Shown in pieces: positions 13,525 to 46,316 of a stretch of DNA of 64,000 nt. Under the pieces are notes generated by a model. It worked only from the letters and a program-made list of their open reading frames with translations. It made no database searches and was not told the DNA's origin. How positions within the stretch are numbered: position 1 is the first letter of the stretch; the number at the start of each line of letters is the position of its first letter. The translations under genes were made by a program, and so were the position numbers. The stretch spans positions 141,064-205,063 of IMG/VR virus record IMGVR_UViG_3300043426_000266; one strand, given 5' to 3'.

Positions 13525-15681
13525 ATGACTGCAACTCCAAGACCTTTTATTTTTGATAAATTTGAATACCAGCGGGATGGTGATCCATTAGCACATTGGA
13601 TTAAAGCTCAAACTGATTATATCACAAAGTTATACGGCTACGATCGAGATTATGTTGAGCGTTGGGTGAGAGACTCGATCAAAGAGGGTGGTGCTTCTCC
13701 GTTCTTTGATCGCAAAGTCCAGTTAATACAACAAACTTCTCCTGGAAATAGAGAAGTGCAAGTAACTTCTTTTTATGCTTATCAGAAAACAGCACAAAAA
13801 GAAGGGTATGTATTATCCCCATCTCAAACTGCGTATAAAGATCCAGTTGAAAACCCATCCATTATGGCGAAGTTTACAGACTTTAACGCAAAGCTTCGTT
13901 CAAAATATAAAAAGACAGCACAAGATGCTAAGGTAAAGAAACAAACCGCAATCGCTGAAGAAAATGGTGTACTCCAGCTGAACACAAAAGAGTTAAACAA
14001 CTCATTCTCAGGTGCGAACTCATCATGGTACAACGCTCTTTGTAATGCATCTGGCCATCAGGCATTAACCTCAACTTGTCGCTCTGCTACGTCGTATGCA
14101 AACATTATTTGCGAGCGATTCTTAATGGGTAATCGAGTTTACGTTAATGTGGATATTGTTATTCAGGAATTATCAAATGCGTGTTTACTAGCAGACCATG
14201 ATTCTATTTGGAAAATAGTTAATGAGTACAACTTAAAAGTTCCAACGGCAGATGACGTGTATTCGACGGCTGAAAAATCTTTCTCTAAGTATTTCCGCTC
14301 AAGAGAAAAAACGGCAGACATTAAATTGTTTATTTCAACAATGGACGATGTATCTCGCTGCGCATTTGTTTATCTGGGGGATTTGTATCATCTAGATAAG
14401 TTAAATCCGTGGTTCGTAGAAAATCTATTCAAAGAACTTAGTGAGTTTACCAAGGAGAACACTGAACCAACCGATGATCTCTACTCAACTGCTTCTGACG
14501 ACATGCGTACTTTAGTATTCTCGTTGCTCAAGGATATGACCAAGGGTAAAGTTTATAAAGACTTTACAACGGCAGAAGATCCTACTGGCAAATCAATTAT
14601 TAATAACACCATCAAATCGTATTACTCGTTTTTCAATAAGTACGAGAAATTTATTAATGCGTTGTGGAGACCTACTTACTTACCTTCTGGTATGGCGTAT
14701 CTACGAACAATGTTACGAGAGGTTATTTTAACTTCTGATACTGACTCGGCAATTGGAACCACGCAGCATTGGACAAAGAGAATAACCGGGTCTTATAATT
14801 TCGAACCTGAATCATTTATGGTTTGCTTTAATTTAATTTATTTCATTTCAGAATCTGTCGCTAACGCCTTTGGTAAACTTTGTGCGAACATGGGTGTGCC
14901 TGGTGAACTGATTGATCAGCTCGGAGCAAAGAACGAATACTACTTCCCAATTTATACACTAACAGAAGCAATGAAACATTATTTCTGTTGGAAGATGTTG
15001 GAAGAAGGTCGAGTACTTCCCGAACTTGATTTAGAAAAGAAAGGGGTTGGTTTCATTAGTGCTAGATACGCGGCTAAAATTCAGACTGAGTTAGATGAGT
15101 ATATTGAAAAAGACATCTTAACCAATGTAATGCAGAATATACACTTAACTAAGGAGCAGGTGCTCGCAAGACCATTGGCGTTAGAAGAGGAGATACGAAA
15201 CTTAATTCGTTCAGGTGGGATTATTTATCAAACAGACAACATTAAAAGTGCAGAGTCTTATAAAACAAATACAAGTAATGCGACCTACCGCCAGTATCTT
15301 TTATGGCAAGAGGTCTTTGCACCTACTTACGGCATGGTTGATGAGCCCCCGTATTCAGCGTATAAAGTCCCAGTCGCTATCGAGAAAAAACGGCATATTA
15401 AAGCTTGGATCGAAAAGATCCAAGATAGAACATTAGCAGGCAGACTTCAAGCATTTTTAGATAAACACGGCGTAGAACAAATGTCCTCAATTCTCGTTCC
15501 AACCCAGCTTGCTGAGCAGATCGGGATCCCACGAGAAATTGTTGAAATCGCTGATGAAATGAGAGCAACCTCTCAAATCATGCAGCCATTCTATTTAGTG
15601 TTGCAAGGTCTTGGGTTTCTCTATACAAACCATAGTCAAACAAAATTAATCAGTGACTATCGCTTTATAGAAGAGCGGTAA
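13525..15681 (+). CDS. Split family-B DNA polymerase, fingers/palm/thumb subunit (phiKZ gp50-like)
   Basis: Motif B Q-x-x-x-K-x-x-x-NS-x-SG (QLNTKELNNSFSG), motif C SDTDS, and KHYF. Motif A is missing here and lies in the 43961 gene. Confidence 0.9.
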   Translation: MTATPRPFIFDKFEYQRDGDPLAHWIKAQTDYITKLYGYDRDYVERWVRDSIKEGGASPFFDRKVQLIQQTSPGNREVQVTSFYAYQKTAQKEGYVLSPSQTAYKDPVENPSIMAKFTDFNAKLRSKYKKTAQDAKVKKQTAIAEENGVLQLNTKELNNSFSGANSSWYNALCNASGHQALTSTCRSATSYANIICERFLMGNRVYVNVDIVIQELSNACLLADHDSIWKIVNEYNLKVPTADDVYSTAEKSFSKYFRSREKTADIKLFISTMDDVSRCAFVYLGDLYHLDKLNPWFVENLFKELSEFTKENTEPTDDLYSTASDDMRTLVFSLLKDMTKGKVYKDFTTAEDPTGKSIINNTIKSYYSFFNKYEKFINALWRPTYLPSGMAYLRTMLREVILTSDTDSAIGTTQHWTKRITGSYNFEPESFMVCFNLIYFISESVANAFGKLCANMGVPGELIDQLGAKNEYYFPIYTLTEAMKHYFCWKMLEEGRVLPELDLEKKGVGFISARYAAKIQTELDEYIEKDILTNVMQNIHLTKEQVLARPLALEEEIRNLIRSGGIIYQTDNIKSAESYKTNTSNATYRQYLLWQEVFAPTYGMVDEPPYSAYKVPVAIEKKRHIKAWIEKIQDRTLAGRLQAFLDKHGVEQMSSILVPTQLAEQIGIPREIVEIADEMRATSQIMQPFYLVLQGLGFLYTNHSQTKLISDYRFIEER

Positions 15682-16916: not shown

Positions 16917-16969
16917 GAGACTAATTAATGTCTTTTCATTAACAATTGTTATCAAGCAAGGATATATCC

Positions 16970-18835
16970 ATGACAAGTTTAAAAATCGGTAATCAAAATC
17001 AAGAAACAACTCAAAACCAAACTAACGATCGCGGTCATGGTGGCGACCGCCGTGAGTCTCGTCGTGAGTCTCGCCGCAAAAATGCAGACGACACGTTCGT
17101 AAGTTTAGTAGAATTGCTTCGCCCAGAAGCAGCTGGCAAAGCAATGCAACCCCGTGCTGAAAATGCACTTAAATGGGTGCAAGCTTCACTTGCTCGTGAT
17201 CCTGAAATTATTAAAGGCCATGAAGTTCGCATCACTTCAATTTCTCGTGAAAAAGGATACCCAGTTAAATATCCTGGTATCGTCATCACTTTGTTTAACC
17301 CATCAACAAATCGTATCGCTTCACATACCTTGATGTTAGAAGATGGCGAAACATTACAACCATTAGAAAACCGTACTTTCCGCGGCGAAAATATTACCCC
17401 AGAACCAGTACCTTCAATGGTGTGGGATTCTGAATACCAACAAGCGGTTCGCACAGAAGTGTACGAGCTTTATAAAGACGTGGCTGATGTGAAATATGCA
17501 TCAATGGGTGTGACTGTAGTTCCACACACACTGTCTATCCCAATTATCACTGAACATACCAGTCAAGACATTAACCCGTTAGATGCGCAGTTTGTTGCAA
17601 TTGTAGAAAGCTTGTCAAGTTTCTACAAATGGTTAGGTCGTGATGCAAGTCGTGTTAAACTAGGTGAAGCATTCAACCCTGACCGTGAACAGCTGGTTGC
17701 AAACGTTGACCAAGCACCAACCATTGAGTTTGATCAAATGGGTCAACCACGTCGTTCAGACTTCTGTATTTCGTTGTCTGTGAAAAAGCGCCGTGATGAA
17801 AAACGCGACGTTGGTCCGCTGTCTTATAACCGCGATGACCAAGTTGATTCCGGTACTATTCTTCGTGTATCAGGTTATTGCTTGCCTTACTACACTCAAC
17901 CAAACCTCGATGATAAAAAACCACGTAACTTCGGTATCAATATCATCGTAACTGCAATTGAAGGTAAATCAACACCGTCGTTAGAATTGTTCCTTTACGG
18001 TATGGCTTCAACAACTGTATTGACCAACAACGACATGTGGGCGGATGGTTTCAAACCAGCATTGATCGTTGCAGACCCAATGCGTAACCTTGGTGGCCTG
18101 TTCCTTGAGATCCCTGATCAAAATGGTGAATCAATGCCGCGTCGTGACTACGCTGCGAGTTCATCTAATGAATTCTTAGATGACGTAGATTTCTTGTTCA
18201 GCTCTGATGTTACTGTGTCGTTAGATTGTTCTGAATCTGGTGCGACTGCCTGGATTACAGATTTGTTCTTGAACAACGATCTTGACGCAATTGAAGAAGC
18301 TGCTGACAACTTGACCAACGAAGAATATAGCGCCATCGTGAACAACGATGTGAATGATGCAATTGTTCGTAGTGATACTCGTCGTTTCTATACTGGTGAA
18401 TACAGCGGTGCACATTCTGTACGTGATATTCGTGATGTTGATTATTTATATCTTATCAACAAATTCGATGAAAACGGTTCCGCAGAAGCTGCAAAAGACT
18501 GGGATGAATCTTTGGGTGATGATAGCGAGTATGGTTTACACCAACGTGCGGTATTGACTCAAGAAGCACTTGGTCACGGCACTTATCGTATCACTGGTGT
18601 GGTTGACCGTGTGAAACTTGATGCTTCATTCTTTGAAGCAGTTGTGAATGCGTTACATAACACTGACATGCTTCCTAACACCAATGATATTTCTCGTGGC
18701 TTCCGTCCTAAACAGCGTCTTGAAGCGAAAAATGTTAAAGGTCGTATGGACAGCCAAGAGCTTGGTTCAAACTATCGCACCAACCATAGTCGCCAGGTTA
18801 ATCGTCAACGTAATGCATTTCGTGATCGCGGTTAA
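16970..18835 (+). CDS. chmA: Chimallin, phage nuclear shell protein
   Basis: 621 aa, directly upstream of the nvRNAP beta-prime gene. G-x-P-x-RSDF, MRNLGGL and RDIRDVDYL-x-x-IN parallel the chimallin motifs G-x-P-x-RAD, MKDIGAL and RD-x-RDLD-x-L. Codon bias of a highly expressed gene; own promoter and terminator. Start placed at the ATG after AAGGA. Confidence 0.88.
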   Translation: MTSLKIGNQNQETTQNQTNDRGHGGDRRESRRESRRKNADDTFVSLVELLRPEAAGKAMQPRAENALKWVQASLARDPEIIKGHEVRITSISREKGYPVKYPGIVITLFNPSTNRIASHTLMLEDGETLQPLENRTFRGENITPEPVPSMVWDSEYQQAVRTEVYELYKDVADVKYASMGVTVVPHTLSIPIITEHTSQDINPLDAQFVAIVESLSSFYKWLGRDASRVKLGEAFNPDREQLVANVDQAPTIEFDQMGQPRRSDFCISLSVKKRRDEKRDVGPLSYNRDDQVDSGTILRVSGYCLPYYTQPNLDDKKPRNFGINIIVTAIEGKSTPSLELFLYGMASTTVLTNNDMWADGFKPALIVADPMRNLGGLFLEIPDQNGESMPRRDYAASSSNEFLDDVDFLFSSDVTVSLDCSESGATAWITDLFLNNDLDAIEEAADNLTNEEYSAIVNNDVNDAIVRSDTRRFYTGEYSGAHSVRDIRDVDYLYLINKFDENGSAEAAKDWDESLGDDSEYGLHQRAVLTQEALGHGTYRITGVVDRVKLDASFFEAVVNALHNTDMLPNTNDISRGFRPKQRLEAKNVKGRMDSQELGSNYRTNHSRQVNRQRNAFRDRG

Positions 18836-30576: not shown

Positions 30577-32685
30577 ATGCAACTAGGGTATAAAGAAAGT
30601 GAAGTTGATGTTCGTGCACTAGGTTCCGCTGGATTAAATTTTGCAGCAAGCAACACATCGTCACAACGTCTTCACATGGATACCTCCCATCTTAAACAAC
30701 ATCTCACACTTATCGACGGGGATGCTAAAAGATGGTTTACTGGAGTTGAACGTGAGTATGCTAAACGCGCATATAAAGCAGAATTTCCAGTTGATTGTAT
30801 GCGCGTATTTGAAGTTATCACTAAATACTCGGGTATGATTCCGTCCGATATGGATTCACCTTTAACATTGGTTGTTTACGAAAGACGAGATGACCATAAA
30901 ATCGCAGTATTAGAACTAGCTAGTTCTCGTTGTGAACATCAAACCTTTGGTTTTACTTACAAGAGAACCAAAGAAGGTCGAGGGGTTTTAAAACATAAAG
31001 CATTTAAAGCAGGGACTATTCTGGCCAAACCACCAACGATTACTGACGACGGTGATTACAAGTATGGAAAGGAATTAAAAACCTTTGTGGGTAATACATC
31101 CGCCGGGGTTGAAGATGGTGCCTGGATCTCCGATGAAGCTGCATACATGCTTCGTACTGATGCGTTTGGTGAGTTAGACATGACACTTGATAAAGGGCAT
31201 GTATTACTTAACATGAATGGTAACGAGCGTCATTTCAAAGGGATCCCGGACATCGGGGATTATCTACGAGACGATGGTTTGGTAATGGCGTGTCGTGAAT
31301 TGCATAAAGATTTCCCGATGCAGCTTTATAACAAACATGCGTTACGGGAACATTCGCAACTTGACAACTTACGATATGGTGAACCGTTTGTTGATACCGC
31401 TCAATACATTGGGTTTGAATTACCGCCCGGGGAAGAGTTATTACTTCGCCCTCGTGTAATCGATATTGAGGTGATTAAAGGTGGTTCTAACAAAACCCCG
31501 ATTACCAAAAGTGAAGAGCAATTAAATAAGTACTGGGAAAAAACCGTACGTTTTCATGAAGCAATTCGCAAAACCCATGAAGATTTAGAGCGTTTAATTC
31601 CAAACTATGAACTTGACCCTTCTTGGCAACGTTATGTTGACGATGCATACTTTTATACCACCCAACCCCATGGCACTCGTTCTGAAACATTAAAGAACAA
31701 ACCATTACCCCAGTGGTCAATTAAGGTAAAATATCGTTATACTTTCGTACCGACTATTGGTGCAAAAATCACAAACATTCACGCGGGTAAAACAGTAATC
31801 GTTAAGAAAACCCCGCGACACATGATGCCAAAAGATGCCGATGGTAATTATGCCGATGTGGTTGTTGAGGATATCTCAATTGCAAACCGTATGAATCCTG
31901 GGGTTGCGTTTGAGGGTCGTTTAGGTTCGTGTGAATTGGCAACACGTAAACGAATTAAAGAAATGTGGGATGCTAAAGTTCCTTTTGATGAAATTTATGA
32001 TTATTATGTTGGGTTTGTTAAAATTGTATCCCCAATGTCTTACCATGAATTATTAAATCCAAGTATTGATCGTGAGTTAGAACTCAAAGAAGTTATGGAG
32101 GGAGGTATTTATGCTTATGTTCCACCTTCTTTAGGCGCATACATGATTGATATCTTAGCTGAACTCACCGCTAAGTACCCACCTTGTAGAGAGCGTCTTG
32201 AACTCACAACGAATGATGGCCGAAAAATCCTGACTGACGAGAAAGCAGAAATTGTAGTCTTACATTATCAGTTTACGGAGCGAGCTGGGAATAGCTTCTC
32301 TGCAGTTAGTTCGGCTAAACGTCAACCCTTCGGCATCCCAACCAAAGCATCTCAATTGGATAAGAATAGTTTTCCAACTAAGATTTCATCTACTCGATTC
32401 CCGTCGGAGGCGGATACAAAATCAATCCAATCTCACATTAACAATGAAGGGATTCCAGAACTTATGGATCGTAGTTTAAACCCCGTTTCTCATTGGTTCT
32501 TATTACGATCTTTGATTAGAAGCGTAAATCCCGCGAAGATTAAAGATGCGGTTTCTCGTAAAATTATTCCACGTATTGGTAATCGGATTATCGCAATCCG
32601 AGACACTATGCTTTTAATTGCGGGAATCAAGTTTAAAGAGGGGCGGGATGGTAATAGCGTTTTACCAGAAGACGAGGTAGAATAA
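30577..32685 (+). CDS. Non-virion RNAP beta C-terminal subunit (phiKZ gp71-73-like, uninterrupted)
   Basis: SS-x-R-x-x-M-x-x-SH-x-x-Q, EDG-x-x-IS, GAKITNIHAGKTVI (GDK...H-x-x-K), RMNPG. Confidence 0.92.
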   Translation: MQLGYKESEVDVRALGSAGLNFAASNTSSQRLHMDTSHLKQHLTLIDGDAKRWFTGVEREYAKRAYKAEFPVDCMRVFEVITKYSGMIPSDMDSPLTLVVYERRDDHKIAVLELASSRCEHQTFGFTYKRTKEGRGVLKHKAFKAGTILAKPPTITDDGDYKYGKELKTFVGNTSAGVEDGAWISDEAAYMLRTDAFGELDMTLDKGHVLLNMNGNERHFKGIPDIGDYLRDDGLVMACRELHKDFPMQLYNKHALREHSQLDNLRYGEPFVDTAQYIGFELPPGEELLLRPRVIDIEVIKGGSNKTPITKSEEQLNKYWEKTVRFHEAIRKTHEDLERLIPNYELDPSWQRYVDDAYFYTTQPHGTRSETLKNKPLPQWSIKVKYRYTFVPTIGAKITNIHAGKTVIVKKTPRHMMPKDADGNYADVVVEDISIANRMNPGVAFEGRLGSCELATRKRIKEMWDAKVPFDEIYDYYVGFVKIVSPMSYHELLNPSIDRELELKEVMEGGIYAYVPPSLGAYMIDILAELTAKYPPCRERLELTTNDGRKILTDEKAEIVVLHYQFTERAGNSFSAVSSAKRQPFGIPTKASQLDKNSFPTKISSTRFPSEADTKSIQSHINNEGIPELMDRSLNPVSHWFLLRSLIRSVNPAKIKDAVSRKIIPRIGNRIIAIRDTMLLIAGIKFKEGRDGNSVLPEDEVE

Positions 32686-34647
32686 ATGTCCAATTTCGAT
32701 TTCAACGAGATCATCCATGTTAAGTATGAAGAAATTCAGCATATAATGGAAACAAATGATCAGGTATCGGTTCGCTGTGATGATGGGGTTTTAACCACCC
32801 CATCAGAAGATTTTCTGTTCAACTGGATTTGTTGGCAATTGTTTCATGCGTTAGATAATGATTTCCCTTCATCTGTTCAGTATACAGTCACCCGAATTGA
32901 ACACATTACCACGAGACCACATTTAGATATCGGGAGTTGGATTCTTAAAGACTATGTTAAATGGTCTGAAGAAAAAGGTATTATTCAAAACCTGGACGGT
33001 ATTAAGAAGCAGATTTACGATTTAACAAATCTTCTTTATAACTTTATTGACAATGAACTTGATAACCAAACAACGGATATTTGCTTTGATCACTTCAATG
33101 AGATTTATCAACATCCTGATGTGTTAAAAGCAAATACGGCAATTCAAAATGCGGTCGTCGTGAGTCATGAAAACATTAAACACGTTTATGAGGTTATTAC
33201 CAAAACAACTCTAAATGATCCAGGTCTAGCAAACAACTCACTCGCATTGGCAGCGCGTTGTGGGGTCATTAAACTAACCCAGCTTTCAATGGTGCTTGGT
33301 CCAATTGGATTCTGTACTGATATTAACTCTAAGATCATTCCTAAAGCAATTCGTGTAGGTTTCTTCAGAGGAATGGGTAAACTTGATGATATGCTTTATG
33401 AGTCAAGAAATGCTTCAATTGCAGCGTTATTCAACATTGTAATTATGCCGCTATCTGAGTATACAAACCGTCGAACACAGCTCCCTTGTGAGAACGTGCA
33501 AACAATTGTGTATAAAGATTGTGGGGCGAAGTCTGAGCGAATTCAAGTAGTGAGTAAAGCTCACTTAAAAACCTTACTTGGATTTACATTAACCGATGGT
33601 CGTGAAGGTCGACCAATCAAATACATTGAGGAATCAGATACAAGTTTAATTGGGCAAAGTATTTTCATCCGCTCGCTGAACTACTGTCGACACAAAGTTC
33701 GTAATGAGGTTTGTTCGACCTGTGTTGGGCTCATGCATTATTCATTTCCTAATGGTTGTGTTGTGGGTCACGTGTCTGGGACTCAACTGGGCGCGGCTTT
33801 ATCCACATCAGTGTTACAGCGTAAGCATGAAAACTTAACCAGTAAAGCTGGTGGATTAACCATTGATGAAATATACCAAAATTATTTCAGAGTGAATGAG
33901 ATTGGTAATGGGTTATGCTTCTCAGATAGCTTTGACTTCTCCAAGTGGTCGATTGTTTTAACTCCAGAATCAGCTTCTCATTTAAAAGAGGTCAATAGTG
34001 AGTACGGTGACGGTTTAATTCCAAGCCAAACAACTCGTATTGAAATGCTTCAACTTCAATCTAAAGACGGTTTGGAATCTATCCTGATGCCAATCGGTCT
34101 AGGGCAACGTGCTGGATTCCTTACCAAGGAGATGCTACGGTTCTATAAGGAAAAAGGTTGGACGTTTATTGATGGTAATCTTTATCAGCTCGATCTAGAG
34201 GGTTGGGATAATCAGTCTGAATTCTTAACCATTCCGCAGATTGAGTTTACACCTCCAGATTTAATCTCAGCAGTCAGTGGATTCATCTTCAGTGGTAATA
34301 AAGGTAAGAATAGCGCATTCAAAACGCCAAGCTTATCAAATTGTCTAAATGTAGATGATGCGTATGCGTCGTTCTATGATCTGATTAAAGATCACCTGAA
34401 GCTACACTCAGTTCATCTGATGTTTATCATTCTGGCAATGTCAGCACAAAATCCACGCGTTTACGATTATCGTCTACCGTACCCTCGAGAGACTTCTCGT
34501 ACCGCAAAACTAGATGATATTATGTTTTATCGATCTGCCGGAGGAGCAATGGCTTATGAAGAACAAAACACGTTCTTTTTAAACCCGATTACCTATTTAG
34601 TTGATCGCAGACCTCCACACATTTATGATTCTATCATCATGGGTTAA
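32686..34647 (+). CDS. Non-virion RNAP beta-prime C-terminal subunit (phiKZ gp74-like)
   Basis: GF-x-RG...ESR bridge-helix region, DCG, and RS-x-x-x-C...C-x-x-C-x-G zinc site. Confidence 0.9.
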   Translation: MSNFDFNEIIHVKYEEIQHIMETNDQVSVRCDDGVLTTPSEDFLFNWICWQLFHALDNDFPSSVQYTVTRIEHITTRPHLDIGSWILKDYVKWSEEKGIIQNLDGIKKQIYDLTNLLYNFIDNELDNQTTDICFDHFNEIYQHPDVLKANTAIQNAVVVSHENIKHVYEVITKTTLNDPGLANNSLALAARCGVIKLTQLSMVLGPIGFCTDINSKIIPKAIRVGFFRGMGKLDDMLYESRNASIAALFNIVIMPLSEYTNRRTQLPCENVQTIVYKDCGAKSERIQVVSKAHLKTLLGFTLTDGREGRPIKYIEESDTSLIGQSIFIRSLNYCRHKVRNEVCSTCVGLMHYSFPNGCVVGHVSGTQLGAALSTSVLQRKHENLTSKAGGLTIDEIYQNYFRVNEIGNGLCFSDSFDFSKWSIVLTPESASHLKEVNSEYGDGLIPSQTTRIEMLQLQSKDGLESILMPIGLGQRAGFLTKEMLRFYKEKGWTFIDGNLYQLDLEGWDNQSEFLTIPQIEFTPPDLISAVSGFIFSGNKGKNSAFKTPSLSNCLNVDDAYASFYDLIKDHLKLHSVHLMFIILAMSAQNPRVYDYRLPYPRETSRTAKLDDIMFYRSAGGAMAYEEQNTFFLNPITYLVDRRPPHIYDSIIMG

Positions 34648-43017: not shown

Positions 43018-43511
43018 TTGGTAACGAAGAGTTCAATCGAACTCTTCCGCCTGATGGCCAGCATGTTTTACATATCGAGTATGGTACGAGTGAGCCTGAA
43101 GTTATTCCTCGTATCATGGTCGCTGCTGATGAGTTTAGGTTAGGGCTTGGTGTAAGTACAATTAATGGTTTCGAACGAGCAGCGATAAGACAGGATGTCT
43201 ATGATCAAGTGTTTTTAAAGGAATCCGATCACCCTTATTCAACGATTCGCATGAGTAATAAAGAGCGGTATTCTTCAACCCATTTGTGGTATAGTCGTAT
43301 GGCAGAGTTTATGCTTTATAACGCCGCTGAGAAAACGGGGTTATCATTCGTAGAGTTTGTTAAAATGCCAACATGGTTTGTTGAAAATACACTCTCGACA
43401 CTTAGACAACAAAGTAAAGACACGAGACAGGGCGCTGCAAGTCTTCAAAAAGACATTGAGAAGATGGGTGATGCTGCTGTTGAAAACTTTTCCAACATGA
43501 AAAAACGGTAG
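42993..43511 (+). CDS. -1-frame ORF (172 codons from the slip site; 131 aa from the ATG at 43116), probable C-terminal module of a frameshift fusion (GT/gp51-like)
   Basis: No stop from 42954 to 43509, no ATG/GTG/TTG before 43116, and no obvious SD at 43116. TGLSFVEFVKMP-x-W resembles the chaperone GT/gp51 motif. Confidence 0.65.
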   Translation, partial: YPRPPKILIGNEEFNRTLPPDGQHVLHIEYGTSEPEVIPRIMVAADEFRLGLGVSTINGFERAAIRQDVYDQVFLKESDHPYSTIRMSNKERYSSTHLWYSRMAEFMLYNAAEKTGLSFVEFVKMPTWFVENTLSTLRQQSKDTRQGAASLQKDIEKMGDAAVENFSNMKKR

Positions 43512-43531
43512 GGTAATTACCCTACCGTTTT
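43502..43531. terminator. 30-bp perfect palindrome terminator
   Basis: AAAACGGTAGGGTAATTACCCTACCGTTTT. Confidence 0.85.
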
Positions 43532-43611
43532 ATGGATTAAAATATTTTTAGATATATTATTTAAGAGCTATCTGAATATATTGCAAGCCTGAAAAATAAT
43601 AGTCTATCGCA

Positions 43612-43815
43612 TAAATAAAGAAGGGGCAATTGCCCCTTCTTTAAGTATATTTAGTTAACGCATTAACCCCGGAGAGACCAGCCTCTCCGGGGTTAAATGT
43701 CTGACCTTTCTGGAGTTGGGTCAGAGGGGGTAGTGCCCATTCTACACTTACCCTTTATGATAAACTTAACATTCATGAGACTTTCTCATGAATCAATCGG
43801 TGTTAAGTTTATCAC
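43612..43815 (-). ncRNA. Candidate structured non-coding RNA (strand tentative)
   Basis: Four adjacent hairpins in a 450-bp gap with no ORF of 60 aa or more. A minus-strand TATG ends at the foot of the longest hairpin, with a palindromic terminator at 43616-43643. Confidence 0.35.
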
Positions 43816-43931
43816 ATACTAATAGAAAAAAATTGTATTTAAAGATATGTATGCAGCTTACGATTATTTCATAAGACAATCTTTGAACCAGTCAAATTTG
43901 AACTCTTTGAGTTTACAATCCTGAAAAAATA

Positions 43932-43949
43932 AAGGGGCAATTGCCCCTT
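43932..43949. terminator. Palindromic terminator downstream of the DNA polymerase exonuclease gene
   Basis: AAGGGGCAATTGCCCCTT, same core as at 30091 and 43623. Confidence 0.75.
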
Positions 43950-43960
43950 CTACTTTTTTG

Positions 43961-45691
43961 TCAATTAACGGTTATTTCCTGATACATCTTAGCGGGTAGT
44001 TTGTGCGCGGCAGCAAAGTCTTTATGAAGATCTTGTAATGTTTTTAATTTGTACAAGTCTCGACACGTCGTAATTGCATTTGCATACCCCCCGGTCAGAT
44101 TCACACAAACATAACGGTGTTGGAATGAATCAATCCCTTGTATCTTACATATCTCAAATACCGTGTTTCTTCGACACAACCCCAGCAAGATACCGATCTT
44201 AGGATAAGCTGATATCAAATCCAGGTCGTAGTTATGAATCGTTGTTCTAGATTTTAAGAACGTTTTATCATCTTTAACTAATTGGATTCCTATATCTTCA
44301 AGATGAGTCGCCTCTAGAATATTAATCCAAAGTTCCTTACCAATAACCATCTTGTCAATCTCTTCCTTCATTCGATCAGAAGTTGTAGACATAACCTGGT
44401 CATTCTCTAGGCAGAAAGTATGCAAGGCATCACATAGTTTTCTAGGGTTAGAGTTAAAGTCTTTAATTTGAGAATTACCCAACAACAAAGGTAACTTGGT
44501 GCTGATGTCTTTAAACTTCTCATCGAACTCCTCTACGCGAATACAGTCAATCAAACCATAAGCACAGTATTCCTTTTTAAAGTGTTTCTGCATCACCATG
44601 TGCCATCTCCCAGTACCCGTAGGGATGCCTTTTAATAACTCATGTTCTACGTGATATTTACCTTGACCCAGATACTTCGTTGTTAAGTAGTCTAATGAAT
44701 AAGAAGGCTCTGCTTTCATTTTACGAAGACCGCGAAATAAGGAAGCAGGGTCAATAAAGTAAAATGGTGAAGTGGAATATACTGTATGCCATTGTTCCGA
44801 TACTGCCAGGGGTCTAGAAGTACCATCATCTTTACGTTTCACTAATGGTCCTCGTTTGAATTCAAAATGTTTGAATTCAGGAGGAACAGAGGAATGAGAG
44901 AAAATGTCTTTAGGATCAACATTAGCATCCCTGAGGATATCTAATATTACACTCATATCGTAGTTGATGTTCCAAAAACCAATAACGTCAGGCATCCATT
45001 CATTGGCTTTCTCGTACATCTTTTTAATTCCATCAACCATATTGTTAACGAAATCTAATTCTAGTTTAATCTTTCTATCTTTTATTTCTGGCAACTCATC
45101 TTCAATAAACTTACGATATTCTTCAGCAGTGTCTCCAGGATTAACCCACTTGTTTAAAACAACCTGATAAGCTTTGTCTTTAAAACTCATGCTAAAGATA
45201 ATCATCCCAAGATTACCATTCATGTCAAATTCAGTATCTTGAACCGCGACAGTTAAACGGCTACGGGTACTGCGTTTGAATTTCTTTTCGTATTGAAGCT
45301 TAACAACAGAGTTAATGTCAATATCACAACCGTATACAAACGGGCTACGAAAGCACTCTGCTAATCGCATTTGCGGGGTGTAGGGTTTACTAAGTTTGTA
45401 CTGGACTTGACGAATCAGGTCACGTTGAGTTGTTTTGTAATTGATTAAGTTCTGTAGGTATTCTGTCTCTAATTTGTATTGATGTTTTTGATGCGCTTTT
45501 TTTGTAATCCAAAAATCACGTTTAACGTTCTCATGGAACACATACTCAGGGGTACACCCGTCAGTACCATCTGCGTTTTTAACAAAACGATTACGTTTAA
45601 CAAATACAGCGTCCCCCTCATGGGATTTATTATTAATTGCGTAGCATGAATGAATATATTCAAATTCAGGATTATTAACATCGGTACTCAT
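43961..45691 (-). CDS. Split family-B DNA polymerase, 3'-5' exonuclease plus motif A subunit (phiKZ gp82-like)
   Basis: ExoI D-x-E (QDTEFD), ExoII WNINYD, YSLD, ExoIII Y-x-x-x-D (YGLID), motif A DLDLISAYP. GGAGG SD favours the start at 45691. Confidence 0.92.
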   Translation of the reverse strand: MSTDVNNPEFEYIHSCYAINNKSHEGDAVFVKRNRFVKNADGTDGCTPEYVFHENVKRDFWITKKAHQKHQYKLETEYLQNLINYKTTQRDLIRQVQYKLSKPYTPQMRLAECFRSPFVYGCDIDINSVVKLQYEKKFKRSTRSRLTVAVQDTEFDMNGNLGMIIFSMSFKDKAYQVVLNKWVNPGDTAEEYRKFIEDELPEIKDRKIKLELDFVNNMVDGIKKMYEKANEWMPDVIGFWNINYDMSVILDILRDANVDPKDIFSHSSVPPEFKHFEFKRGPLVKRKDDGTSRPLAVSEQWHTVYSTSPFYFIDPASLFRGLRKMKAEPSYSLDYLTTKYLGQGKYHVEHELLKGIPTGTGRWHMVMQKHFKKEYCAYGLIDCIRVEEFDEKFKDISTKLPLLLGNSQIKDFNSNPRKLCDALHTFCLENDQVMSTTSDRMKEEIDKMVIGKELWINILEATHLEDIGIQLVKDDKTFLKSRTTIHNYDLDLISAYPKIGILLGLCRRNTVFEICKIQGIDSFQHRYVCVNLTGGYANAITTCRDLYKLKTLQDLHKDFAAAHKLPAKMYQEITVN

Positions 45692-45748
45692 TTTTGTATC
45701 CTCCAACCTTCACATATACTCAAACCTCGTTTTATTAAAAATAAAAAT

Positions 45749-45771
45749 AGATATATATTATTTACATGCAC
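45749..45771 (+). promoter_or_regulatory. Candidate early promoter
   Basis: AGATATATATTATTTACATGCAC. Confidence 0.65.
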
Positions 45772-45800
45772 ACTAACCGTGTTTTATCAAGGAGACTATC

Positions 45801-46316
45801 GTGTCAACTATCTTAACTTTTAATCATGATCCAGAAGCAATATATGAACTAGACCAATATTTTGATATTGTAAGCAATATCGAGAATGATCTTATCCGTC
45901 AAATCTTTGCAGCAGTTTTAGGGGAATGGCAGGGTGATCTAGAATCAGACGATTGGGGTGAATATACCCACTACGAATTAGTTAAAAAACTATCAGATGA
46001 AGAAATGGAAGCATTAATAAATATTTATTCTGAAATTACCAATTTACCAATCAGCGTAATAGGGCTTCTAAGTTTTTATGAGTCTACTACTATTGACAAT
46101 GACAATTACCAACTCGATTATACAGATGATGTTGTTGGGGTGGGTTTTGAAGACTTTATTAATGCGAATCTTTCTAAATCAATCTTTGAAAATGATTTCT
46201 CAGTCTCTACTACTAAATCACCATTTGAAGATGAACCAAACGCGATTAGTGTTCAGATAGAAGGAAAATTCTCCTTGTTATTTGAATTGATTGAAGAATT
46301 CAATCAAGACGTTTAA
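45801..46316 (+). CDS. Highly acidic hypothetical protein in a stand-alone early cassette
   Basis: AAGGAG SD, GTG start; own promoter and UUCG terminator. Confidence 0.7.
   Translation: MSTILTFNHDPEAIYELDQYFDIVSNIENDLIRQIFAAVLGEWQGDLESDDWGEYTHYELVKKLSDEEMEALINIYSEITNLPISVIGLLSFYESTTIDNDNYQLDYTDDVVGVGFEDFINANLSKSIFENDFSVSTTKSPFEDEPNAISVQIEGKFSLLFELIEEFNQDV

What the first reader, a model, noticed from the sequence alone, without database searches (positions are those of the whole stretch)
43530..43960. Structured 430-bp non-coding island: four hairpins between two copies of the same terminator core
Seen: no ORF of 60 aa or more. It contains a 14-bp stem TTAACCCCGGAGAG/CTCTCCGGGGTTAA (43663-43696), a 7-bp stem (43700-43725), a bulged GGGTAGTG/CACTTACCC stem (about 43728-43753), and a 57-nt nested hairpin with a 14-bp outer stem (43758-43771/43801-43814) and 10-bp inner stem (43771-43793). 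Both ends carry GGGGCAATTGCCCCTTC palindromes (43623, 43934), each with a CCTGAAAAA-like motif upstream. A minus-strand TATG (43818-43815), the phiKZ late-promoter core, would start transcription exactly at the foot of the long hairpin. That gives an RNA of about 200 nt ending at the 43616-43643 palindrome. Inference: a phage structured ncRNA, or alternatively a replication origin or packaging/organising element beside the DNA polymerase exonuclease gene.
Basis: partly seen in the sequence, partly recalled or inferred. Interest (0 to 1): 0.7.

Follow-up and report, generated by a model that had tools for sequence, protein, structure and literature searches.

The report
Hairpin cluster in a wrecked cargo slot
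The hairpin-rich 430-bp gap next to this giant phage's DNA polymerase gene is real and is the most strongly folded stretch of the genome, but it is mostly the wreck of a variable accessory-gene slot, and its unique four-hairpin core looks more like an orphaned RNA leader than a replication origin or a proven stand-alone RNA gene.

Summary
The 160-nt window 43658-43817 is the most stable fold in the 205-kb genome of a nucleus-forming, phiKZ-like jumbo phage from wastewater and freshwater.

The island is composite:
- The two "terminator cores" are the genome's stock bidirectional terminator, which occurs seven times.
- 43534-43618 is a deletion scar. Half an early promoter is fused to the last 21 codons of a 270-aa accessory gene that the nearest relatives still carry at this spot.
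- The four-hairpin core (43663-43814) occurs only in this phage species. It has no Rfam, tRNA or covariance-model match anywhere else I could search.

The slot between the conserved 131-aa gene and the DNA polymerase gene holds different cargo in every relative, and cumulative GC skew does not turn here. An origin or packaging role is therefore unlikely.

Strand evidence is split and slightly favours the plus strand. H3 plus TTTATGA is a phiKZ-type terminator/promoter junction. The H4 polymorphisms are G-U-compatible on the plus strand only. In one co-circulating strain, a ribosome-binding site and ATG follow H4.

No transcript data exist. A second hairpin array elsewhere in the genome shows compensatory stem changes, so such arrays are maintained in this clade. 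Interest is moderate to low.

The parts
43116..43511 (+). Conserved 131-aa gene (phrog_12109, function unknown). It forms the left border of the variable slot.
   Evidence: Orthologues flank the slot in every relative examined.
43502..43531 (.). Terminator A. A 13-bp palindromic stem-loop overlapping the stop codon, followed on the plus strand by TTTATGG.
   Evidence: It fits the phiKZ-type terminator motif of a GC hairpin followed by TTAT (PMC10914365).
43534..43561 (+). Upstream half of an early promoter, truncated at an ATTAT microhomology.
   Evidence: It scores -2.4 on the early-promoter matrix, against 10.6 or more for the 29 intact copies, all of which lie on the plus strand. It is a near-copy of the promoter at genome position 121328 with one AT missing. 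The junction was mapped against L080.
43553..43618 (+). Remnant of the last 21 codons of a lost 270-aa-family accessory gene. It reads YII*ELSEYIASLKNNSLSHK* with an in-frame stop at 43562-43564.
   Evidence: tblastn E = 0.001-0.002 against the 270-aa protein of L080. The local alignment scores 59, with 0 of 2,000 shuffles as high. A 22-nt stretch is 86% identical up to the shared stop codon.
43616..43643 (.). Terminator B. The stock GGGGCAATTGCCCC palindrome that once ended the lost gene. Its TTTAT tail is intact on the minus side only.
43663..43696 (.). H1. A 14-bp perfect stem with a 6-nt loop, invariant in all 11 copies.
   Evidence: The same stem sequence occurs by chance in 63 unrelated bacterial and metagenomic places.
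43700..43725 (.). H2. A 7-bp stem with a 12-nt loop that contains CTGGAG.
   Evidence: Its stems do not vary.
43728..43760 (+). H3. An 8-bp bulged stem followed directly by TTTATGA. On the plus strand this is the genome's standard terminator/TATG-promoter junction.
   Evidence: and PMC10914365. All four polymorphisms in H3 (43737, 43740, 43742, 43748) fall in the loop or the bulge.
43758..43814 (.). H4. A nested hairpin (14-bp outer stem, 10-bp inner stem, 7-nt one-sided internal loop). Its 3' half carries TTCTCATGAATCAATC and TTTATCA.
   Evidence: The 16-nt stretch is identical to the initially transcribed region of an early unit at genome position 28299. The A>G polymorphisms at 43763 and 43764 give G-U on the plus strand only, and T>G at 43776 breaks one inner pair.
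43812..43818 (-). TATGTGA, a candidate promoter core for the phage's non-virion RNA polymerase, at the foot of H4 on the minus strand.
   Evidence: It is identical to the core upstream of the DNA polymerase gene. 5 of the 17 genomic copies are intergenic. It ranks at the 97th percentile of a low-information TATG matrix.
43815..43912 (.). AT-rich spacer. It contains a 25-codon plus-strand ORF (43847-43924) with no good ribosome-binding site, and may be a decayed 5' end of a second lost gene.
   Evidence: The resemblance to the lost gene's C-terminus is weak (p = 0.0085-0.24). In one strain this stretch is replaced by a ribosome-binding site plus ATG.
43913..43951 (.). Second copy of the ..CCTGAAAAA(A)TAA.. 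motif plus the GGGGCAATTGCCCC palindrome. This is terminator C, the terminator of the DNA polymerase gene on the minus strand.
   Evidence: direct-repeat families D1 and D2.
43961..45706 (-). DNA polymerase gene (phrog_3011). It forms the right border of the slot.

Best explanation
The island is the wreck of a hypervariable accessory-gene slot between two conserved genes of a chimallivirus. It is not a single designed element.

Read on the plus strand with this genome's own punctuation (a stem-loop followed by TTTATG marks the end of one unit and the start of the next), it parses as follows:
1. The 131-aa gene, ended by terminator A.
2. The scar of a deleted early gene: half an early promoter fused to the gene's last 21 codons, ended by terminator B.
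3. A short unit with no ORF, made of H1 and H2 and closed by H3 plus UUUAUG.
4. H4, which encloses what was the start of the 5' untranslated region of a second cargo gene. That gene is lost here, but a co-circulating strain still seems to have it directly behind H4.
5. Terminator C, shared with the DNA polymerase gene.

The four-hairpin core is therefore most likely a plus-strand structured leader or upstream RNA module that has been orphaned by gene loss. It would work like the structured leaders and prematurely terminated 5'UTR RNAs described in phiKZ and 201phi2-1. Transcripts fold into very stable stem-loops, most end at the H3 terminator as a short stable RNA, and read-through would have carried on into the cargo gene.

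Shown: the anatomy, the deletion scar, the stock terminators, the restriction to one lineage, and the variable slot.

Inferred: the strand, the transcription, the link to a lost gene, and any present-day function.
For: Identity of the phage: the window encodes a nuclear shell protein, multisubunit RNA polymerase beta subunits and phiKZ-type DNA polymerases.

Deletion scar.

Variable slot: relatives with DNA polymerase 68-85% identical, or a 131-aa protein 90% identical, carry something else here. These include a 270/274/290-aa ORF, or one or two secreted-looking ORFs of about 111-113 aa, or a 66-73-aa ORF. Most lie on the plus strand behind an early promoter.

Stock terminator: 7 copies in the genome.

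Punctuation grammar: 38 intergenic cases of a hairpin followed by TTATG (31% of intergenic TTATG sites against 3.6% of those in coding sequence). This matches the published phiKZ terminator motif (PMC10914365). H3 fits it on the plus strand only.

Promoter spacing: 21 gene starts have a TATG 18-32 nt upstream.

Strand evidence from polymorphism:
- The H4 changes at 43763 and 43764 keep pairing as G-U on the plus strand only.
- The block loses 4.4-5.8 kcal/mol on the plus strand against 8.2-10.2 on the minus strand in the haplotypes that carry the H4 changes.
- Variable sites avoid stems: 3 of 10 fall in stems against 65% expected, binomial p = 0.028.

Co-circulating strain: a 180-nt contig from run X10 (record 5) is about 93% identical over 43685-43824. 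It then continues with CAAGGAAACATTTTAAATGATG.., a canonical AAGGA ribosome-binding site plus ATG.

H4 content: its 3' half is identical over 16 nt to the start of an early transcript elsewhere in the genome.

Precedent in the same genome: the hairpin array at genome 119360-119860 keeps its hairpins by compensatory changes in a relative. One 10-bp stem has 4 pairs changed on both sides, with the same loop and the same linkers.

Published analogues: short structured 5'UTR RNAs made by premature termination in phiKZ and 201phi2-1 (PMC10914365, PMC11512511).
Against: - No intact promoter was found between terminator B and H1 on the plus strand. The early-promoter matrix gives nothing there.
- Terminator B stands between the broken promoter and the hairpins.
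- The link to a lost gene rests on the 39 unaligned bases of a single low-depth contig. I could not recover that sequence elsewhere.
- The minus strand offers a tidy unit running from TATGTGA to terminator B.
- Two singleton changes in one haplotype (43624, 43699) are G-U-compatible on the minus strand only.
- The block diverges at about twice the synonymous rate of the flanking genes (6 substitutions in 161 nt against 15 synonymous changes in 2,930 coding nt). One change breaks an H4 pair without compensation. The block may therefore be unconstrained today.
- No double-sided compensatory change exists among the available copies.
- No RNA data exist.
Confidence: 0.42

Rival explanations
1. A stand-alone minus-strand non-coding RNA of about 205 nt. 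The phage's non-virion RNA polymerase would start at TATGTGA (43818-43812). The RNA would begin with H4 as a protective 5' hairpin, run through H3, H2 and H1, and end at terminator B with its UUUAUUUAUG tail. It would be an accessory RNA gene that replaced a protein-coding cargo gene, for example a decoy or regulator.
For: TATGTGA is identical to the core 24 nt upstream of the DNA polymerase ATG, and 5 of its 17 genomic copies are intergenic. It ranks at the 97th percentile of the TATG matrix. Terminator B has the phiKZ-type TTTAT tail on the minus side only. The L082 changes at 43624 and 43699 are G-U-compatible on the minus strand only. The whole unit is structured from end to end. All 4 substitutions in H3 lie in its loop or bulge while the stem is kept, which would suit a specificity loop.
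Against: TATG-type motifs carry very little information, with 1,318 in the genome. The common H4 polymorphisms create C-A mismatches on this strand, and the block loses 8-10 kcal/mol. H3 plus TTTATGA and the ribosome-binding site plus ATG behind H4 in another strain both point to the plus strand. There is no homologue in any relative and no covariation.
Confidence: 0.25
2. Functionless debris. The hairpins would be by-products of inverted duplication or template switching in DNA that lost its genes, and they persist only because the deletions are recent.
For: The block lies among proven gene and promoter remnants. The 5' half of H4 is a reverse copy of its 3' half, which itself resembles an early-transcript start. 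That pattern is what a single inverted duplication would give. The divergence rate is at or above the neutral rate, and one stem pair is broken. The block is absent from all relatives outside the species.
Against: Four adjacent near-perfect stems form the most stable window of 2,562 in the genome. Variable sites avoid stems (p = 0.028). The block is kept in all 11 contigs from several studies and in a more diverged strain. The other hairpin array in this genome is maintained by compensatory change.
Confidence: 0.22
3. A DNA-level element: a replication origin, a packaging site or a site that organises the genome beside the polymerase gene.
For: It has strong potential to form cruciforms or single-strand hairpins, and AT-rich DNA lies beside it.
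Against: It is absent at this position in relatives whose neighbouring proteins are 84-90% identical, and the slot content differs in each relative. Cumulative GC and AT skew rise steadily through the site with no turn. No iterons or direct-repeat arrays were found. No second copy exists in the genome.
Confidence: 0.04
4. A small non-autonomous mobile element (MITE-like or IS200/IS605-derived) with hairpin ends, inserted between two terminators.
For: A 15-nt inverted repeat (12 of 15 complementary) brackets the block at 43638-43652 and 43831-43845. Direct repeats of the terminator module flank it.
Against: It is single-copy in the genome. No Y1 transposase or TnpB domain was found in the 205-kb record. 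No other copy turned up in IMG/VR, JGI metagenomes or GTDB genomes beyond chance H1-like terminators.
Confidence: 0.03
5. A small protein gene: the 41-codon ORF at 43697-43822 or the 25-codon ORF at 43847-43924.
For: Both ORFs exist on the plus strand. The one substitution inside the 25-codon ORF (43864) is synonymous.
Against: The 41-codon ORF loses its ATG in L082 and is frameshifted by the G deletion at 43726 in most haplotype B copies (5 of 6). Neither ORF has a good ribosome-binding site. The 41-codon ORF shows no similarity to the slot's cargo proteins (p = 0.25-0.97).
Confidence: 0.03

Closest known systems
Short structured 5'UTR and intergenic RNAs of phiKZ and 201phi2-1, made by premature termination (ONT-cappable-seq; PMC10914365, PMC11512511)
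   Same: The phage family is the same. So are the ingredients: a phage promoter, one or more stable stem-loops, and a hairpin-plus-TTAT terminator inside a leader, giving RNAs under 250 nt of unknown function.
   Different: No transcript has been seen here. There is no sequence or Rfam similarity. No intact upstream promoter and no downstream gene exist in this genome. Four tightly packed hairpins make it far more structured than the published examples.
phiKZ-type intrinsic terminator motif: GC stem-loop followed by TTAT (PMC10914365)
   Same: Terminators A, B and C and H3 all fit the motif. The genome has 38 intergenic hairpin-plus-TTATG junctions.
   Different: H1, H2 and H4 have long stems or large loops and no T-rich tail, so they are not stock terminators.
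PeSL composite terminator/early-promoter cassettes of T4-like phages (PMC2839356, PMC4122927)
   Same: A stem-loop terminator followed within about 60 nt by a conserved early promoter borders the variable cargo. Close relatives differ by insertions, deletions and replacements at exactly these cassettes.
   Different: The phage family and the promoter sequence differ. The deletion seen here used a 5-6-nt microhomology inside the promoter rather than recombination between cassettes. Excised circles or recombination intermediates were not tested.
The second hairpin array of the same genome (G000 119360-119860) and its counterpart in a relative (L093:1170-1614)
   Same: Both are tandem perfect stem-loops of 8-15 bp in a long intergenic region, ending in a hairpin plus CTTTATGC.
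   Different: That array is conserved in position and shows compensatory stem changes. It also sits upstream of a plus-strand gene. The array in the finding has no counterpart in relatives and no gene behind it.
REP/BIME extragenic palindromes of enterobacteria (from general knowledge)
   Same: Both are clusters of stable palindromes between convergent genes, and both could stabilise 3' ends and block read-through.
   Different: REPs are multi-copy families. These hairpins are all unique sequences. Other convergent junctions in this window manage with a single terminator in 29-63 nt.

Membership tests
Any Rfam 15 family (including ribozymes, CRISPR-DR families and known phage RNAs) | Score at or above the family's gathering threshold | tested here: not met
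   There were no matches at gathering thresholds over the whole window. At E up to 10 on 43450-44010, the best match was His_leader at 31.6 bits against a threshold of 49. All matches are driven by the terminators.
tRNA / tmRNA | Cloverleaf recognised by ARAGORN | tested here: not met
   No genes were found in the window.
phiKZ-type intrinsic terminator | GC-rich stem-loop directly followed by a (Y)TTAT(K) tail | tested here: met
   The motif fits terminator A (plus strand), H3 (plus), terminator B (minus) and terminator C (minus) (motif from PMC10914365). Actual termination was not tested.
phiKZ-like early (virion RNA polymerase) promoter | Full match to the genome's early-promoter consensus ..AGATATATATTATTTACRTGAA.. 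| tested here: not met
   The copy at 43534-43561 scores -2.4, against 10.6-59.7 for the 29 intact sites. It is cut off downstream. No other match exists in 43480-43990 on either strand.
TATG-type middle/late (non-virion RNA polymerase) promoter | TATG core with T-rich upstream sequence, typically 18-32 nt before a start codon | tested here: inconclusive
   Candidates lie at 43754 (plus strand, TTTATGA) and at 43818 (minus strand, TATGTGA, identical to the DNA polymerase core). The motif carries too little information to decide.
5'UTR-derived short RNA by premature termination (phiKZ, 201phi2-1) | A mapped transcription start upstream, a terminator inside the leader, and a gene downstream | tested here: inconclusive
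   A terminator-like H3 is present. No start site could be mapped. The downstream gene is absent here and only hinted at in one variant contig.
PeSL-like terminator/early-promoter cassette | Stem-loop terminator plus early promoter bordering variable genes, with insertions and deletions between close relatives at the cassette | tested here: met
   About 10 of the 29 early promoters have a stem of at least 8 bp within about 60 nt upstream. The slot's left border is such a cassette in the window and in L080, L005, L010, L090 and L091. Recombination intermediates cannot be tested with these tools.
Conserved structured RNA | Base pairs kept by changes on both sides across homologues | tested here: inconclusive
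   Across 7 distinct haplotypes and 52 pairs, no pair changed on both sides, 2 pairs changed to G-U on one side, and 1 pair was broken. The copies are at least 95% identical.
Replication origin | Conserved position among relatives, a skew inflection, and iterons or an unwinding element | tested here: not met
   It is absent in relatives. Skew shows no turn. There are no iterons.
IS200/IS605-type element or MITE | Cognate transposase or TnpB in the genome, and multiple copies | tested here: not met
   PF01797 and PF07282 are absent from the record. The block is single-copy. The record is only about 70% complete.
Protein-coding small gene | An ORF kept intact across haplotypes | tested here: not met
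   The 41-codon ORF loses its start codon in L082 and is frameshifted in 5 of the 6 haplotype B copies. The 25-codon ORF remains untested beyond one synonymous change.

The most novel reading that the evidence does not exclude
The four-hairpin block is a live accessory RNA gene of a nucleus-forming jumbo phage. It would belong to a wider, undescribed class of tandem hairpin-array RNAs in this clade, whose stems are kept by compensation while their loops turn over quickly. All four H3 substitutions lie in its loop or bulge. Such an RNA might act as a decoy or specificity element in phage-host or phage-phage conflict.
Probability: 0.12. Interest if true: 0.65.

Novelty: new member of a known kind. 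Interest (0 to 1): 0.35.

Why it matters
If the plus-strand leader reading holds, the locus is a clean natural example of how chimalliviruses turn over cargo genes at terminator/promoter cassettes. It shows that regulatory RNA modules can outlive their genes.

Together with the second array, which has compensatory changes, it also points to hairpin-array RNAs as a recurring and unstudied feature of these phages' long intergenic regions.

Practically, it warns that the most structured stretch of a phage genome can be largely a scar. Origin or RNA-gene calls made from structure alone need comparison with close relatives.

Tried and rejected
**Known RNA families.** Rfam at gathering and at permissive thresholds, and ARAGORN, found nothing.

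**Public phage records.** blastn found no DNA match. The DNA polymerase reaches only 31-35% identity to known jumbo phages.

**Pattern scans.**
- IMG/VR scans with the DNA polymerase and with three hairpin patterns, plus the variant's sequence behind H4, found nothing.
- Scans of JGI metagenomes and GTDB genomes with the H1 stem gave 63 hits. They share only H1 and are chance terminator look-alikes, mostly in Clostridia.

**Covariance model.** A model of the block, searched over the whole 205-kb genome and the relatives' loci, matched only itself.

**Remnant hypotheses.**
- The 41-codon ORF as the N-terminus of the lost gene family: rejected (p = 0.64 and 0.97).
- The spacer and second repeat copy as a second C-terminal remnant: unconvincing (p = 0.0085 against copy 1, 0.24-0.51 against the proteins).
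- Cargo proteins of relatives against the island: only the C-terminal scar is significant.

**Other functional readings.**
- Insulator between convergent genes: other convergent junctions in the window are 29-63 nt with one terminator.
- Origin: skew shows no turn.
- Mobile element: no transposase was found.

**Transcript evidence.** The wastewater runs labelled RNA-Seq are marked as probably DNA and exist only as contigs, so they say nothing about transcription.

**Selection from rates.** Divergence is patchy along the region. The hairpin block is at about 4% and the neighbouring non-coding DNA at about 0.3%, against about 2% at synonymous sites. This looks like mosaic recombination rather than a readable signal of selection.

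**Cargo gene function.** Pfam and PHROGs gave no function for the cargo proteins.
Full report
**Setting.** The window is the last 64 kb of a 205-kb IMG/VR contig, estimated about 70% complete, with 38% G+C. It encodes a nuclear shell protein (16946-18835), multisubunit RNA polymerase beta subunits (30577-34647) and phiKZ-type DNA polymerase genes. Its DNA polymerase is only 31-35% identical to phiKZ-like jumbo phages in GenBank. The phage is therefore a divergent nucleus-forming chimallivirus. Near-identical DNA is present in freshwater and wastewater runs from several studies.

The fold is far from chance, with z = -10.75 on the plus strand and -9.58 on the minus strand. The window 43658-43817 is the most stable of 2,562 160-nt windows across the genome, about 6 sd from the mean. 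The 449-nt gap lies between convergent genes: a conserved 131-aa gene on the plus strand and the DNA polymerase gene on the minus strand. Rfam and ARAGORN find nothing.

**The genome's own grammar.** Three recurring signals help to read the island.
- A strong early-promoter consensus (..AGATATATATTATTTACRTGAA..) occurs 29 times, always on the plus strand and upstream of genes.
- A stem-loop followed directly by (T)TTATG occurs 38 times between genes, which is 31% of intergenic TTATG sites against 3.6% of those in coding sequence. This matches the conserved phiKZ terminator motif of a GC hairpin followed by TTAT (PMC10914365). TATG also tends to sit 18-32 nt before start codons, so these junctions look like a terminator and a middle/late promoter in one.
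- The core GGGGCAATTGCCCC is a stock bidirectional terminator with seven copies, all at gene ends.

**The slot is variable and the left third is a scar.** Homologues of the DNA polymerase form a graded series. Contigs with a 99-100% identical polymerase carry the same island. More distant relatives do not:
- The relative with an 84% identical polymerase (L005) has a 274-aa ORF there.
- The relative whose 131-aa protein is 90% identical (L080) has a 270-aa ORF there.
- Others have a 290-aa ORF, or one or two secreted-looking ORFs of about 111-113 aa, or a 66-73-aa ORF.

In the window, 43553-43618 translates to YII*ELSEYIASLKNNSLSHK*. This matches the C-terminus of the 270-aa protein (..SIIELAEYVTKLEENSLLHK*), with tblastn E = 0.001-0.002 and an alignment score of 59 that none of 2,000 shuffles reached. 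Directly upstream lies the upstream half of an early promoter, joined to the remnant at an ATTAT microhomology. So 43534-43643 is half a promoter, the last 21 codons of a deleted gene, and that gene's terminator B.

**The hairpin core is lineage-specific.** H1-H4 and the spacer have no counterpart in several places I searched:
- the relatives' loci;
- the rest of the genome;
- IMG/VR.

Matches to the H1 stem in JGI metagenomes and GTDB genomes are unrelated terminator look-alikes. Unlike the stock terminators (6-12-bp palindromic stems with 4-nt loops), H1, H2 and H4 have long stems or large loops and no T-tail.

**Population variation.** Eleven contigs fall into two haplotype groups, and the same variants appear in four wastewater runs.
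- Within 43655-43815, ten sites vary. Seven are unpaired, including all four changes in H3, which lie in its loop or bulge.
- Two changes (43763 and 43764, both A>G) keep pairing as G-U on the plus strand only.
- One change (43776, T>G) breaks an H4 pair with no compensation.
- The avoidance of stems is modest (binomial p = 0.028) and the sites are linked.
- The 41-codon ORF across H2-H4 loses its ATG in one haplotype and is frameshifted in most copies of the other, so it is not a gene.
- There are no double-sided compensatory changes, because the copies are too similar.
- Divergence in the block is about twice the synonymous rate of the flanking genes, while the adjacent non-coding DNA is nearly invariant. 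This pattern suggests mosaic exchange rather than a readable signal of selection.

**Which strand?**

For the plus strand:
- H3 plus TTTATGA fits the terminator/promoter junction on this strand only.
- The G-U polymorphisms favour it, and the block keeps more of its stability on this strand: it loses 4.4-5.8 against 8.2-10.2 kcal/mol in the haplotypes that carry the H4 changes.
- Most cargo in this slot in relatives is plus-strand, behind an early promoter, sometimes with a structured leader that shows compensatory change.
- H4's 3' half is identical over 16 nt to the start of an early transcript at genome position 28299, and it contains the TTTATCA typical of early 5'UTRs.
- A 180-nt variant contig in run X10, about 93% identical over 43685-43824, continues after H4 with an AAGGA ribosome-binding site and ATG.

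For the minus strand:
- TATGTGA at 43818-43812 equals the core upstream of the DNA polymerase gene.
- Terminator B has its TTTAT tail on the minus side only.
- Two singleton changes are G-U-compatible only on this strand.

I weigh this as roughly 60:40 for the plus strand.

**DNA-level readings.** An origin or packaging site is unlikely.
- The element is missing from close relatives, and the slot content changes from phage to phage.
- Cumulative skew rises steadily through the site.
- There are no iterons.

A mobile element is also unlikely. The block is single-copy, and no Y1 transposase or TnpB domain is found in the record. Other convergent gene pairs in the window are separated by only 29-63 nt, so a four-hairpin insulator is not a general need.

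**Precedent in the same genome.** A second array of tandem perfect hairpins lies at genome 119360-119860, outside the window. MAFFT cannot align the syntenic gap of a relative beyond the first 95 nt. The hairpins nevertheless sit in the same order, with identical linkers and loops and with compensated stems. One 10-bp stem has four pairs changed on both sides. Both versions fold far better than shuffles. Hairpin arrays are therefore maintained as structure in this clade. This raises the prior that the block in the finding is, or recently was, functional.

**Verdict.** The island is a composite of stock terminators, a proven deletion scar and one unique four-hairpin module. The module is best read as an orphaned plus-strand structured leader or short RNA unit of a lost cargo gene (confidence about 0.4). 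Its rivals are a stand-alone minus-strand RNA (about 0.25) and plain debris (about 0.2). The closest published analogues are the short structured RNAs produced by premature termination in phiKZ and 201phi2-1 (PMC10914365, PMC11512511), and, for the slot's borders, the PeSL terminator/promoter cassettes of T4-like phages (PMC2839356, PMC4122927). Transcript mapping is the decisive missing evidence.

Noticed in passing
Outside the window: G000:C1:119360-119860 (L092:1461-1961); relative L093:1170-1614: A second array of 5-7 tandem perfect hairpins lies upstream of a 248-aa gene. In a relative the sequence is unalignable, but the hairpins keep their order, linkers (TTCCTTATAGAG, GGTTrrTT) and a loop (CTTGTT), with compensatory stem changes. 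The array starts with a conserved GAAA-tetraloop hairpin and ends in a hairpin plus CTTTATGC. It is a good candidate for a real structured RNA.
   Followed up: partly
Window 1958, 8204, 16898, 25380, 45753, and 24 more sites in the rest of the genome: A highly conserved early-promoter consensus (..AGATATATATTATTTACRTGAA..) has 29 matches. All are on the plus strand and upstream of genes. About 10 are preceded within 60 nt by a strong terminator stem-loop, forming PeSL-like cassettes.
   Followed up: partly
Genome-wide, for example window 13038, 13462, 59776, 62775: A stem-loop followed directly by (T)TTATG(C) recurs 38 times between genes. It matches the published phiKZ terminator motif and doubles as a TATG promoter 18-32 nt before many start codons.
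   Followed up: partly
L010:5771-6707 and L091:2068-2692: In the 72-73% relatives the slot holds one or two ORFs of about 111-113 aa with signal-peptide-like N-termini and conserved cysteines (two in L010, one in L091). An early promoter and a roughly 200-nt leader precede them, and the main hairpin of the leader shows compensatory changes between the two phages.
   Followed up: partly
Outside the window: G000:C1:28290-28420: A mini early unit: an early promoter, a 45-nt leader, a 15-codon ORF (MRTKSKTFKSNWLCC) and a terminator. Its first transcribed bases are identical over 16 nt to the 3' half of H4.
   Followed up: partly
Outside the window: G000:C1:10650-10720 and 80140-80210: Two gene ends share an identical stretch of about 50 nt (..aaatcgaaataaaagtagaa, the stock terminator core, then ttctctttaatatgc). 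Each is followed by another very strong hairpin. These are duplicated 3' modules.
   Followed up: no
Window 45766-45855, seen against L088: One otherwise near-identical contig is heavily diverged over about 90 nt. The patch covers the divergent promoter region between the DNA polymerase gene and the next plus-strand gene. It is another mosaic patch.
   Followed up: no
Window 13525-15681 and 43961-45706: Two separate DNA polymerase-family genes (phrog_2927 and phrog_3011) lie 28 kb apart, as in phiKZ-like phages.
   Followed up: no
L080:2841-2855: This Logan contig ends in CTGTCTCTTATACAC, which from general knowledge is a Nextera adapter. Its last bases, including the terminator of the 270-aa gene, are therefore not phage sequence.
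   Followed up: no
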